The notes under the pieces were generated by a model. That model made no database searches, was not told where the DNA came from, and saw nothing but the letters and a program-made list of their open reading frames with translations. A stretch of 63,458 nucleotides of DNA, counting the filler, from Octopus bimaculoides (lineage: Eukaryota), in assembly GCF_001194135.2 (NCBI RefSeq). It is 5 parts of 5 records of this genome, joined end to end, with 100 filler letters (N's around TTAATTAATTAA, not from the genome) between each part and the next. Parts side by side here need not be neighbours in the genome. Positions count along the whole stretch, not along the records: positions 57,161 to 61,900 come from NW_026364014.1; 4 more parts are not named here. The stretch is one strand, 5' to 3'. Position numbers and translations under genes: made by a program. Of the stretch, positions 57,161-61,900 are shown piece after piece. Position 1 is the first letter of the stretch; every line of letters begins with the position of its first letter.

Positions 57161-57210
<50 letters not shown>

Positions 57211-57821: not shown

Positions 57822-58360
57822 TGTGCGTGTGTGTGTGTGTGTGTGTCTGTGTGTGTACATAGAAAAGGAATAGCATTTCTTCTTAAAATCACAGGCATAT
57901 AAAGAGAGTAGAAAAATAATTATTTGCTGTAGAGAAAACGTCCTATAGATAAATATGAGGTGTTGCCTTTTGCAAACTTCCACCTCACAGACAGCGAAAA
58001 TATTTTCCAGATTTATTTGTTGTACTGTGCTTTTCCATTTTATACGTGTGTGTAAATTCATATGTATTTATATATGTATTGGTGCGAGTGCTTTCGATCA
58101 CTGCAATGATGTGAATCACTATAAACTACTTTTCTTTCTGTAACACCCTTATACAGCTGTAGTCACAAGAAGTATACGTCTTGGTAGCAACCCAGTTTAA
58201 ACACTAACGGATCAACAAACAACTCTTGTAATGAAATTGTTCGATATTTCTTGGAGTCTTTTGTCTAAACAAGTGTAAAAGAGAAAATTATAATTAAACA
58301 ATTATAATGAGAACATCATAATCGGAATCAATATACACGAAATCTAATTTTTAAAAATTT

Positions 58361-58401
<41 letters not shown>

Positions 58402-59043
58402 CTATAAACAAGGAGAATCGATCAAAATCGATCAGATAATACGTGTGTTTTTTTAAATTTTATTTTAAATATTCACTGTAAATCTACTCTACTACAATCA
58501 ATCAAACTACTACTATCAAAATTACTACTAATAGTACTACTACATGTTGCAATTGTTGTTTTTACTCGTTATTGTTGCTGTTGAAGAAGACGATGATGGT
58601 GATGATTTAGGCAGTGATGGTGATGCTAACTTCACTACTCGTCTCATCCTTATTCCGAAAAATGTGTAAAGCCAACACAAACCAGAAAAACAAATAATTA
58701 AAGATGATGCATAGATTCATGACAGTGTATGTACACACACACACACAAATACACACATACAAACAGAATGATTTACTTGATATATAATATACTCGTGCAT
58801 ATTCGTGGTTGTATTTGAGTATCAGACACCATATACATACGTATATGTAAATATTGTTGGCCCTAAAAGTTTATACATATGCAATACATGAAAAGTGTTG
58901 TGTATATGCACAAGGTAAAGCAAATATCTATGTACATGTGTATGTGTGTGTATGCATGAAATATATAAATGTCTATATAATAGACATTTATGTATATAAT
59001 ATATGATATGTATATATAATATATCATATATATGTATTATATC

Positions 59044-59075
<32 letters not shown>

Positions 59076-59507
59076 ATACATACATATATACGAACACGTG
59101 CCCCTCGTGTAAAAAAAAGGAAACACTTAGAGAGGGCTGAACTGGAAGGAGAGAGAAAAATAGAGAGACTTTTCGAAGGAGAGAGAGACAGAAAAAACGA
59201 AGGAGTAGGTGAAAAAGTTAGAAAGTAAGAGAAAAAGTGAACGACGAGAAAGAGGAAAAGAGAGAGGGGGAGGAGAGTGAGGAGGAGGGGAGGAGCAGCA
59301 GGATGAGGAGAAGGAGGAGCAAGAAGAATAGAGAAGAAAAAAATGCAAAATAAACAAATAAAATGAAAATGTAAAAATGGCACAAAAAATAAACAACAAA
59401 AAAACAATGAACATTAAAGAGTTCATTTTCGTAAACAGAAACGAGCGAAAGAAAGGCAAATAGATTTTCTAAATATATATAGATGTATAGAATAAAAGAT
59501 GGCTTAC

Positions 59508-59577
59508 CGTTATTATCAAGGAAAACATGATGTTCGTTTTCTATATGTTTCGGATGCGACTGCTTTCGACGTGACAT
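59508..59577 (-). CDS. First coding exon of a probable C2H2 zinc-finger repressor with an N-terminal NuRD-binding motif (SALL/spalt, BCL11, FOG/ZFPM or ZNF423/521 class; family unresolved)
   Basis: ATG TCA CGT CGA AAG CAG TCG CAT CCG AAA CAT ATA = MSRRKQSHPKHI, then ENEHHVFLDNN + G|gtaagc (phase-1 donor at 59507). A at -3 of the ATG. Confidence 0.85.
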
Positions 59578-59598
59578 ACTGAATATTTGTAGACTCCC

Positions 59599-59748
59599 AA
59601 ATGACAAAAGTTGGCGTTTTGCTATTTCTGATTTATATATGCGGCACCCTTGTGCGCATGTCAGAATTATGATTATGAATAACGTTCGTATATTATCATA
59701 ATCAATTTGCAACAAGAAATTTGATTGGCTTTGATCCCGTTTGCCAAT
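59599..59748 (-). promoter_or_regulatory. Putative core promoter of the MSRRKQ gene
   Basis: TATATAAA at 59639-59632; Inr-like TCATTT with A at 59602 (TATAAA at about -35, slightly long); agCCAATca at 59728-59724; opposite-strand CCAAT at 59744-59748. Motif evidence only. Confidence 0.45.
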
Positions 59749-59929
59749 TAGCTGAGCAAATATTACGGGCAAGTGATGAGGGGGTACTATAACTGTTTGG
59801 TATTTCGGACAGGAGAACGATAAAAAGTTCCATGAAGGCGAAACATGATTGCGATTGTTTGCATTCGGCATATTGTAGAAAAATGCTTTTCTCTTCTCGT
59901 TTTGCTTTCGGGTTAACTTTTACAGCTTG

Positions 59930-60062
59930 CTGGTGGTGTCGGTGGTGGTGGTCGCCGTCGTTGTGGTTGTAATGTTGGTGTTGTTGTTTGTGTTGCTGGT
60001 GTTGTCTGGGCTGTTGTTTTTGTGGAAAGTGATGGTTGAACTGATGCTGTTGTTGTAGTTGA

Positions 60063-60106
<44 letters not shown>

Positions 60107-60170
60107 CTGGTGTTGATGTTGATGATGGTAATGGTGTTGATGGTGGTGGCGGTGGTGGTTTTGGTGATGC
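59930..60170. repeat. Mixed CAA/CAT/CAC/CAG trinucleotide low-complexity tract upstream of the MSRRKQ exon
   Basis: Reads as polyQ/H in a 168-codon minus-strand ORF (60208-59702). Confidence 0.85.
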
Positions 60171-60344
60171 GTTGAGGCGAGGATTTTCTCGCTTACGTAA
60201 CAGAACATGGTTTAACAGCGGACAGAAGAGTTTGTAAGGGGGCAATATGTGAATACAAAAAGCGAAAAAAGTCAGACAAAACGAGGAAAATATATGTATA
60301 TACCTACATACACCTATGCATAACATGCACGTGCGTCTTATCTA

Positions 60345-61121: not shown

Positions 61122-61900
61122 GTATACATATATATATGTATATATATATATTGTATATTATATTCATATATATATATATATAAGCACTTTTCCATATACA
61201 CGCAGATACGCATGCACACATACAGAGAATAATATCAACTTTCACGCACTCATTATATAAAAATAATTCTACACACCTTTGTTTATACACGTAATAAACG
61301 TCTAGATATTGACTTCAATGCAAATGAGAAATGAATGAATCATTTCCCATGTAGTATCGGTCACACTCAAAATAGTTTCAACGTCTCTTTCGCCATTCTA
61401 GCATGGGTTAGACCCATACGCACAGATGCACACACGCATATACGATATACATATATACGTACATACATATATATGTGTGCGTGTAGAGAGAGAGAGCGAG
61501 AGAGAGAGAGAGAGGGGGACAGAGAAACTGATAGATCAACGGACAGCGAGATAGGGTATTTACATTTAAAAGAAGTTTGTTAGCGAACTCAATACTTGCG
61601 TGATTTTATTGCTTATTTAACAGAATAACAATTCATTTTAAATAAACAAAATCTACCGGAATATATATATATATATATATGTGTGTGTGTATGTATATAA
61701 TGTGTATGTGTGTTTGTGTCTATTAATGTATTTCTAGAATTTATGGATAGAACGATAAAAAGTATCTCGTACTTTAAACGTTCTTACATCTCACACACGT
61801 ACTCTCAAGCATACAGGGACTCATTACAACTACTATGAGAAGTGCTAATTTTGTATATACATGTGTGTATATATATATATGTGTGTATGTGCATATATAT

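What the first reader, a model, noticed from the sequence alone, without database searches (positions are those of the whole stretch)
59508..59577. Orphan first exon with the NuRD-recruiting MSRRKQxxP motif
Seen: MSRRKQSHPKHI followed by a phase-1 GT donor, hidden inside a junk-looking 217-aa ORF. Known: FOG1 (MSRRKQSNPRQI), BCL11A (MSRRKQGKPQHL), SALL (MSRRKQAKPQH) and ZNF521 use this N-terminal peptide to bind RBBP4/7 of NuRD, typically on a short first exon. No zinc-finger exons are visible in the window and the exon sits on a 4.7-kb scaffold, so gene models probably miss it and the protein would look as if it lacked the motif. The SHPKHI variant does not identify the family.
Basis: partly seen in the sequence, partly recalled or inferred. 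Interest (0 to 1): 0.7.

Follow-up and report, generated by a model that had tools for sequence, protein, structure and literature searches.

The report
Octopus NuRD-motif first exon, orphaned
This is a real short coding exon from the octopus genome that carries the well-known peptide used by zinc-finger regulators to recruit the NuRD repressor complex. Because it sits on a tiny unplaced scaffold, it is annotated as a meaningless 138-residue "uncharacterized protein", which is an annotation problem and not new biology.

Summary
On the minus strand an ATG at 59577 opens a 70-nt coding stretch, MSRRKQSHPKHIENEHHVFLDNN plus one base, ending at a G|GTAAGC donor (59508|59507), inside a 217-aa ORF. 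Chance expectation for MSRRKQxxP in this piece is about 1e-6.

An exhaustive protein search identified the source. Splicing 59871-59508 to 58264-58212 reproduces RefSeq XP_014789931.1, "uncharacterized protein LOC106883434" of Octopus bimaculoides, exactly. So a gene model does use this donor. It starts at an upstream in-frame ATG, which buries the motif at residue 99, and it stops 17 codons into a second exon. It has no zinc fingers.

A metagenome scan found 23 invertebrate-host-like contigs with MSRRKQSHPKP(I/V)K, also followed by a phase-1 donor. There the Met is usually the first in-frame ATG. Their first intron holds a conserved cluster of GATA sites.

Every FOG-1 residue whose side chain contacts RbAp48, except Gln-11, is retained.

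Best reading: this is the first coding exon of a zinc-finger cofactor, cut off by assembly fragmentation. FOG/U-shaped is the leading candidate (about 0.5) and SALL the main rival. It is a new member of a known kind and of low interest.

The parts
59508..59577 (-). Coding part of the motif exon: ATG plus 23 codons plus 1 nt, MSRRKQSHPKHIENEHHVFLDNN(G/D). Residues 1-12 form the NuRD-interaction (FOG repression) motif.
   Evidence: sequence, translation, chance 1.1e-6. (P0001 matches it). (contact residues of FOG-1 in the RbAp48 complex).
59502..59507 (-). 5' splice donor GTAAGC, phase 1.
   Evidence: It is used by the RefSeq model XP_014789931.1, as reconstructed.
59578..59871 (-). Upstream in-frame open stretch of 98 codons that RefSeq annotates as CDS from the ATG at 59871. 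It is probably 5' leader or promoter and not coding.
   Evidence: 0 stops against 7 and 4 in the other frames; P about 0.0015. (no codon-position bias). (no family, no homologue). (comparator contigs mostly have an in-frame stop before the motif ATG).
59632..59639 (-). TATATAAA, the only TATA-box match outside the (TA)n microsatellite in the 800 nt upstream of the ATG. It is a candidate core promoter (inferred only).
59599..59604 (-). TCATTT, an initiator-like element. Its A lies 37 nt after the start of the TATA-like box and 25 nt before the ATG. A start here would make the motif ATG the first AUG (inferred only).
   Evidence: list of upstream ATGs.
58265..59507 (-). Intron of the RefSeq model (1,243 nt). 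It contains CT-rich and TA/CA microsatellite tracts.
58212..58264 (-). Second CDS segment of the RefSeq model, after the acceptor ...ttttacacttgtttag|AC. It encodes (D)KRLQEISNNFITRVVC followed by a stop. It may be a real short terminal exon or a gene-predictor completion.
   Evidence: splicing 59871-59508 to 58264-58212 reproduces P0001 exactly.
58012..58017 (-). AATAAA, a possible poly(A) signal about 195 nt after the model's stop codon.

Best explanation
The piece is a 4.7-kb unplaced scaffold of Octopus bimaculoides. Positions 59577-59508 (minus strand) are the first coding exon of a transcriptional cofactor gene whose remaining exons, presumably multiple zinc fingers, lie on another scaffold.

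The exon supplies the N-terminal 12-residue NuRD-interaction motif, MSRRKQSHPKHI. By analogy with FOG-1, Arg3, Arg4 and Lys5 would insert into the acidic top face of the RBBP4/7 (p55) beta-propeller, bringing the NuRD deacetylase/remodeller to sites where the zinc-finger part is tethered. This mechanism is inferred from identical contact residues and was not tested.

The most likely parent gene is the octopus FOG/U-shaped (ZFPM) orthologue (about 0.5). SALL is second (about 0.2). ZNF423/OAZ, BCL11 or a lineage-specific zinc-finger gene share the rest.

The RefSeq model XP_014789931.1 is a mis-modelled fragment in two ways. Its start at 59871 follows the longest-ORF rule and buries the motif. 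Its 17-codon second exon is either a predictor's completion or a minor intronic-polyadenylation isoform.
For: The motif and donor are present and far beyond chance.

The organism and the use of the donor are shown. Exhaustive phmmer finds P0001, which is XP_014789931.1 of O. bimaculoides, and the window reproduces it exactly when 59508 is spliced to 58264.

[quoted passage not shown] Positions 7-8 point to solvent (PMC3020727).

The mechanism is conserved from mammals to a protostome. Drosophila Ush-B binds dNuRD through this motif, which is carried on a short isoform-specific N-terminus of 14 unique residues (PMC7891773).

Twenty-three host-like metagenome contigs (12 distinct exon sequences) carry MSRRKQSHPKP(I/V)K followed by G|GTAA or C|GTAAG, also phase 1. 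His8 and residues 11-13 are conserved at positions the search pattern left free. Only GTAA is invariant in the 40 nt after the exon, and the flanks are otherwise unconserved.

In 17 of the 22 comparator contigs that reach an in-frame stop, no in-frame ATG lies between that stop (9-43 codons upstream) and the motif ATG.

The comparators' first intron holds a conserved non-coding block with 6-9 GATA cores against about 1-1.5 expected, and the conserved columns are the GATA sites. This fits a GATA-regulated gene such as FOG/ush.

[quoted passage not shown] SALL2 has Arg7.

The upstream ORF shows no codon-position bias, no family hit and no homologue.
Against: No transcript data could be consulted, so use of the donor rests on a predicted RefSeq model whose evidence I cannot see.

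The only annotated continuation ends after 17 codons inside the same scaffold.

The frame upstream of the ATG is open for 98 codons (P about 0.0015), which is unexpected for a leader.

The exon is 30 nt longer than the comparator exon and lacks Lys13. Its length of 23 residues is closer to the 25-residue SALL2 E1 first exon, and His11-Ile12 followed by acidic residues is SALL-like (SALL sequences from my memory).

The host taxon of the comparator contigs was not established.

The first 30 nt of the comparators were constrained by my own search pattern, so only His8, residues 11-13 and the donor count as independent conservation.

No other cephalopod sequence was available.
Confidence: 0.7

Rival explanations
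1. The mechanism is the same, but the parent gene is a SALL (spalt-like) orthologue and not FOG/Ush. It would be a roughly 25-residue first coding exon carrying the motif, spliced to a very large zinc-finger exon elsewhere.
For: Exon length is 23 residues plus 1 nt, against 25 N-terminal residues specific to human SALL2 E1, which also has alternative first exons. His11 and Ile12 followed by acidic residues resemble SALL4/SALL1 (from my memory, not tested).
Against: Position 7 is Ser as in FOG-1 and Ush-B, whereas SALL has Ala or Arg (memory). Position 10 is Lys, not Gln. The first 12 residues match 11 of 12 (11 of 13 over the full peptide) with the invertebrate exon, whose 13-codon length matches the 14 unique residues of Ush-B. 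Only Ush and OAZ were reported to carry the motif in the Drosophila proteome, so an invertebrate SALL need not have it.
Confidence: 0.2
2. The RefSeq two-exon structure is essentially right. The locus makes a short stand-alone protein with the NuRD motif and no DNA-binding domain, either 138 aa from ATG 59871 or 40 aa from ATG 59577.
For: The model exists in RefSeq. The acceptor has a reasonable pyrimidine tract, the frame closes after 17 codons, and an AATAAA lies about 195 nt further on. The upstream frame is unusually open. Internal motifs can bind RBBP4 (ZNF512B, PHF6).
Against: No homologue of the 138-aa product exists in 1.8 billion representatives or in the 5.8-billion-cluster search. 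There is no Pfam family. The upstream part has no coding-like composition. Exon 2 shows no similarity to anything. Internal motifs follow a different consensus, RK(x)xxPxK/R, which this peptide does not fit (P-K-H). All characterised RRKQxxP motifs are N-terminal, as are the comparators.
Confidence: 0.1
3. The exon is a dead copy or a chance match: either a duplicated or relic first exon no longer joined to a gene, or a fortuitous ORF.
For: The scaffold is unplaced and repeat-rich. A large genome gives close to one chance MSRRKQxxP somewhere (extrapolated).
Against: Beyond the 7 fixed residues, S7, H8, K10 and I12 also match the invertebrate exon. The reading frame, the ATG and a good donor in the same phase as the comparators are all intact. 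CpG codons are retained. A RefSeq model uses the donor.
Confidence: 0.08

Closest known systems
Drosophila U-shaped isoform B (Ush-B) and vertebrate FOG-1/FOG-2 (ZFPM1/2)
   Same: The N-terminus is MSRRKQS-x-P with Ser7 and Ile12. The motif sits on a short, separate first coding exon, so it can be isoform-specific. The RbAp48/p55 contact residues are identical.
   Different: Positions 8, 10 and 11 are H, K, H, against N/K, R, Q. The exon encodes 23 residues, against about 13-14. No CCHC or C2H2 fingers can be seen, so membership is unproven.
SALL1-4 (spalt-like) N-terminal repression motif
   Same: MSRRKQ-x-x-P is followed by H-I (SALL4-like, from memory). The first coding exon is about 25 residues, and alternative first exons include or omit the motif.
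   Different: Position 7 is Ser where SALL has Ala or Arg, and position 10 is Lys where SALL has Gln. The Drosophila proteome was reported to hold the motif only in Ush and OAZ.
ZNF423/ZNF521 (Drosophila OAZ) and BCL11A/B
   Same: They use the same N-terminal MSRRKQ start, which is reported to be widespread in invertebrate ZNF423 homologues and is often lost from gene models because the first coding exons are short. This is the same annotation problem seen here.
   Different: Residues 7-12 differ (A-K-P-R-S-L and G-K-P-Q-H-L, from memory). No family-specific sequence is available here.
Invertebrate host-like exon MSRRKQSHPKP(I/V)K in JGI metagenome contigs (L001-L024 except L006)
   Same: It matches 11 of the first 12 residues, including the S-H-P-K variant. 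The Met is the first in-frame ATG in most contigs, and a phase-1 GT donor follows.
   Different: The exon is 40 nt, against 70 nt, and has Pro11 and Lys13, against His11 and Glu13. The host taxon is unknown and the parent gene is not identified. A GATA-site cluster lies in intron 1, and no counterpart is seen in the octopus piece.

Membership tests
N-terminal NuRD-interaction motif (FOG repression motif, RRKQxxP) | The sequence Met-Ser-Arg-Arg-Lys-Gln-x-x-Pro. | tested here: met
   MSRRKQSHP at 59577-59551.
N-terminal NuRD-interaction motif (FOG repression motif, RRKQxxP) | The residues that contact RbAp48 in the FOG-1 complex (S2, R3, R4, K5, Q6; I12 backbone) are retained. | tested here: met
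   All are identical. Positions 7-8 face solvent in the crystal structure (PMC3020727). Q11 of FOG-1 is His here.
N-terminal NuRD-interaction motif (FOG repression motif, RRKQxxP) | The motif lies at the extreme N-terminus of the translated protein. | tested here: inconclusive
   An ATG directly precedes SRRKQ, and in most comparator contigs it is the first in-frame ATG. Here, however, an in-frame ATG lies 98 codons upstream with no stop, and RefSeq starts there. The transcription start is unknown.
N-terminal NuRD-interaction motif (FOG repression motif, RRKQxxP) | The peptide binds RBBP4/7 (p55) and recruits NuRD. | not testable with these tools
   This needs a peptide pull-down or ITC with octopus or heterologous RBBP4.
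N-terminal NuRD-interaction motif (FOG repression motif, RRKQxxP) | The motif is attached to a multi-zinc-finger or other chromatin-targeting protein. | tested here: inconclusive
   No zinc-finger ORF lies in the 2.3 kb downstream, and the only annotated continuation stops after 17 codons. The scaffold ends at microsatellites.
FOG / U-shaped (ZFPM) | Ser at motif position 7, shared by FOG-1, FOG-2 and Ush-B. | tested here: met
   S7 is present. The FOG-1 sequence is given, and the first 9 residues of Ush-B are reported identical to the FOG motif.
FOG / U-shaped (ZFPM) | A very short first coding exon: about 13 codons plus a split codon, or 14 unique residues in Ush-B. | tested here: not met
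   The octopus exon is 23 codons plus 1 nt. The invertebrate comparator exon is 13 codons plus 1 nt. The phase is the same (1).
FOG / U-shaped (ZFPM) | CCHC zinc fingers that bind the N-finger of GATA factors. | not testable with these tools
   The rest of the gene is not on the scaffold, and no searchable cephalopod genome or transcriptome was available.
SALL (spalt-like) | A first coding exon of about 25 residues that starts with the motif. | tested here: met
   There are 23 residues plus 1 nt here, against 25 N-terminal residues specific to SALL2 E1.
SALL (spalt-like) | Motif variant A/R-K-P-Q at positions 7-10. | tested here: not met
   The octopus has S-H-P-K. SALL2 has MSRRKQRKPQ.
ZNF423/ZNF521/OAZ | An MSRRKQ start on short first coding exons, followed by 20-30 C2H2 fingers. 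| tested here: inconclusive
   The MSRRKQ start is present, and such exons are often missing from gene models. Residues 7-12 of invertebrate members were not available, and the fingers cannot be tested.

The most novel reading that the evidence does not exclude
The annotated two-exon transcript is real and translated from the motif ATG. It would give a 40-residue peptide (MSRRKQSHPKHIENEHHVFLDNNDKRLQEISNNFITRVVC) consisting of little more than a NuRD-interaction motif. Such a natural motif-only micro-protein, produced by polyadenylation within the first intron of a zinc-finger gene, could compete with full-length factors for the RBBP4 pocket and so tune NuRD recruitment.
Probability: 0.06. Interest if true: 0.6.

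Novelty: new member of a known kind. Interest (0 to 1): 0.22.

Why it matters
The finding extends the FOG-type NuRD-recruiting peptide, documented here in mammals and Drosophila, to a cephalopod. Together with the metagenome-derived exons, it shows a conserved S-H-P-K variant in other invertebrates.

In practice it flags a mis-modelled RefSeq gene, LOC106883434. It also illustrates a general annotation hazard: very short first coding exons that carry a functional peptide get separated from their gene in fragmented assemblies. The parent factor then appears to lack its co-repressor motif. The ZNF423 survey reports the same loss of short first coding exons from vertebrate gene models.

It does not reveal a new mechanism.

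Tried and rejected
- With a 57-aa read-through query it found no candidate, although P0001 shares 19 words with it, so that tool cannot be relied on for short regions.
- With P0001 as query it returned only P0001 itself.
- Exact look-ups of ten window ORFs were not in the collection.
- The encoding-contig look-up of P0001 was not on record.
- Pfam on P0001, the 40-aa product and the His/Gln-rich upstream ORF gave nothing meaningful.
- A PDB sequence search with the 23-aa peptide gave no hit.
- Rfam and tRNA scans of the piece found nothing.
- I searched for exon 2 in the comparator contigs to name the gene. The only conserved downstream block is non-coding on both strands.
- The supplements of the Ush and ZNF423 papers hold no motif sequences or octopus entries.
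- The literature on cephalopod C2H2 expansions and on FOG in spiralians says nothing about this motif.
- I considered that the upstream 98-codon frame is coding and rejected it: composition is flat across codon positions and there is no homologue.
- I looked for a GATA-site cluster in the octopus piece like the one in the comparators. Only a (GATA)n microsatellite and scattered sites are present.

Full report
**1. Observation.** Read on the minus strand, the piece shows ATG at 59577, then TCA CGT CGA AAG CAG TCG CAT CCG AAA CAT ATA GAA AAC GAA CAT CAT GTT TTC CTT GAT AAT AAC G, followed by GTAAGC. That gives 70 coding nucleotides: MSRRKQSHPKHIENEHHVFLDNN plus one base, with a phase-1 donor at 59508|59507. 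It lies inside the 217-aa ORF 59218..59871. At the base composition of the piece, MSRRKQxxP is expected 1.1e-6 times in six frames of 4,740 nt. The exon is also locally CpG-rich, with 6 CpG and observed/expected 2.3.

**2. Source and existing annotation.** An exhaustive phmmer search used the first 30 residues (exon plus read-through) against 1.84 billion representative proteins. It returned one relevant hit, P0001, at E = 1.4e-7 with 96% identity over residues 1-25. The two other hits are unrelated repeat proteins that share only HVFLDNNG-like strings.

P0001 is XP_014789931.1, [quoted passage not shown] (taxonomy). Joining window 59871-59508 to 58264-58212 on the minus strand and translating reproduces P0001 exactly, 138 of 138 residues.

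That model begins at an in-frame ATG 98 codons upstream, which places MSRRKQ at residue 99. It crosses a 1,243-nt intron to the acceptor ...ttttacacttgtttag|AC and ends after DKRLQEISNNFITRVVC. An AATAAA lies about 195 nt beyond the stop. The model has no zinc finger, no Pfam family and no homologue other than itself.

As far as I know, NCBI keeps Gnomon models only when they have some transcript or protein support, which would imply RNA-seq evidence for at least part of this one. I could not see that evidence.

**3. Which Met is the start?** The frame upstream of the motif ATG has no stop in 98 codons, while the other two frames have 7 and 4 (P about 0.0015 by shuffling). This is unexplained, and it is the reason the longest-ORF rule picks 59871. 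Several results argue against real coding there:
- Base composition is flat across codon positions, with G at position 1 only 0.15.
- There is no family hit or homologue.
- All characterised RRKQxxP motifs are N-terminal, and internal RBBP4-binding motifs follow a different consensus, RK(x)xxPxK/R, which P-K-H does not fit (PMC11602157).
- In 17 of the 22 comparator contigs that reach an in-frame stop, that stop lies 9-43 codons upstream with no in-frame ATG between it and the motif ATG.

A TATATAAA at 59639-59632 and an initiator-like TCATTT at 59604-59599 lie just upstream. A start there would give a leader of about 25 nt with the motif ATG as the first AUG. The spacing of 37 nt is somewhat long, and this remains an inference.

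**4. Comparative evidence.** No cephalopod sequence could be searched. A degenerate DNA pattern for MSRRKQSxPK was run against JGI metagenome contigs and returned 24 loci. One of them (L006, MSRRKQSAPK followed by a stop) looks like a chance match. The other 23 read MSRRKQSHPKP(I/V)K and are followed after exactly 40 nt by G|GTAA, or C|GTAAG in L019. That is also a phase-1 donor.

They fall into 12 distinct exon sequences and 15 exon-plus-flank types. The first 30 nt were constrained by my own pattern, so synonymous-only variation there is an ascertainment effect. The independent evidence is fourfold:
- His8 is invariant at a codon the pattern left free.
- P11, I/V12, K13 and the base before the donor are conserved beyond the pattern.
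- Only GTAA is invariant in the 40 nt after the exon.
- 38 of the 40 upstream positions vary.

These are intron-containing eukaryotic host sequences. From memory the contig identifiers resemble those of marine gutless-worm symbiosis metagenomes, but I could not verify the host. The octopus peptide matches this exon at 11 of the first 12 residues (11 of 13 overall), including S7, H8, K10 and I12.

**5. Which gene?** I looked for the second exon in the comparators. The only conserved block, 1.4-2.9 kb into the intron, has stops in all six frames. It consists of conserved GATA sites: GCTATCT, CTTATCT, TTTATCTC, CGATAG, TGATAACG, AGATAACG, AGATACG and CGATAAG. There are 6-9 GATA cores per roughly 310-375 nt, against 1-1.5 in shuffles. 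A GATA-site cluster in intron 1 fits a gene regulated by GATA factors, as FOG/ush genes are known to be (background knowledge), but this is circumstantial.

Other pointers to FOG/Ush:
- Ser7 is shared by FOG-1 (MSRRKQSNPRQIKRS) and Ush-B, whose first nine residues are reported identical to the FOG motif.
- The comparator exon of 13 codons plus a split codon matches the 14 isoform-unique residues of Ush-B.

Pointers away from FOG/Ush:
- The octopus exon is 30 nt longer and lacks Lys13.
- Its 23 residues are closer to the 25 specific to SALL2 E1.
- His11-Ile12 followed by acidic residues is SALL-like (from memory).

I therefore put FOG/Ush at about 0.5 and SALL at about 0.2, with ZNF423/OAZ, BCL11 or a lineage-specific zinc-finger gene sharing most of the rest. 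The survey of ZNF423 orthologues notes that MSRRKQ-bearing short first coding exons are frequently missing from gene models, which is the situation suspected here.

**6. Likely mechanism.** In the 1.9-Å RbAp48-FOG-1(1-15) structure, Arg3, Arg4 and Lys5 occupy acidic pockets on the top of the propeller. Ser2 and Gln6 add hydrogen bonds, residues 7-8 face solvent, and Ile12 contributes a contact to Glu-41. Mutating Arg3, Arg4 or Lys5 abolishes NuRD binding. The octopus peptide keeps all of these residues. Only Gln11 is changed, to His.

Drosophila Ush-B binds dNuRD through the same peptide, and the mouse FOG-1 peptide pulls down fly NuRD, so the interaction is conserved across bilaterians. Phosphorylation of Ser2 regulates the BCL11B-MTA interaction, and Ser2 is present here too.

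What is shown: the sequence, the donor, and a predicted model that uses it. What is inferred: translation from this Met, RBBP4 binding, and linkage to zinc-finger exons elsewhere.

**7. Rivals.** There are three:
- The parent gene is SALL or another family.
- The RefSeq product is real. A 138-aa protein with an internal motif seems unlikely. A 40-aa motif-only peptide from an intronic-polyadenylation isoform is possible and would be the most interesting outcome.
- The exon is a relic copy or a chance match, which is unlikely given the extended match, the intact ATG, frame and donor, and its use in a RefSeq model.

**8. Verdict.** The one correction is that a gene model does include the exon, but as an orphan with a probably wrong start and an uncertain end. 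This is a new member of a known kind, an annotation fix more than a discovery. Interest is low (0.22). The decisive checks are placing the scaffold in a chromosome-level assembly and finding spliced reads from the 59508 donor. Both are simple but were not possible with these tools.

Noticed in passing
L003:2745-3054 (+), L011:1-352 (-), L018:1-366 (-), L012:1878-2252 (+), L016:3001-3307 (+); that is, 1.4-2.9 kb downstream of the motif exon in each contig: A conserved non-coding block in the first intron of the invertebrate comparator gene consists almost entirely of GATA sites. It has 6-9 GATA cores per roughly 310-375 nt against 1-1.5 expected, and the invariant alignment columns are the GATA motifs. 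It looks like a GATA-factor-driven intronic enhancer.
   Followed up: partly
window 57161-57202 and 61854-61898: Both ends of the scaffold are TA or TA/CA microsatellites, and about 31 tandem-repeat arrays fill the 4.7 kb. This probably explains why assembly broke here and left the exon on an unplaced fragment.
   Followed up: no
window 59702-60208 (-), repeat core 60042-60166: An imperfect CAA/CAT (TGT/TGATGT on the plus strand) repeat lies upstream of the exon and gives 168-aa His/Gln-rich and 137-aa Thr/Pro-rich ORFs in two frames. There is no significant family match. It is probably non-coding leader or promoter sequence and not an exon.
   Followed up: partly
window 59127-59330 (-): A strongly CT-rich tract on the transcribed strand (a GAG/GGA repeat on the plus strand, with GC skew +0.65 and AT skew +0.71) lies just inside the intron. 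It keeps the read-through frame open and accounts for the junk tail of the 217-aa ORF.
   Followed up: no
L006:781-810 (+): The one metagenome hit that does not belong to the set reads MSRRKQSAPK followed directly by a stop, on a 50%-GC contig. This is consistent with the roughly 0.5 chance matches expected for the pattern (my own rough estimate).
   Followed up: no
window 59488-59577 (-) used as query: HVFLDNNG in the exon tail matches a repeated INGHVFLDNNGDG unit of a 2,250-aa bacterial-type repeat protein (P0002, E = 5.6e-6 summed over 6 repeats). This is a fortuitous short-string match and not homology.
   Followed up: yes
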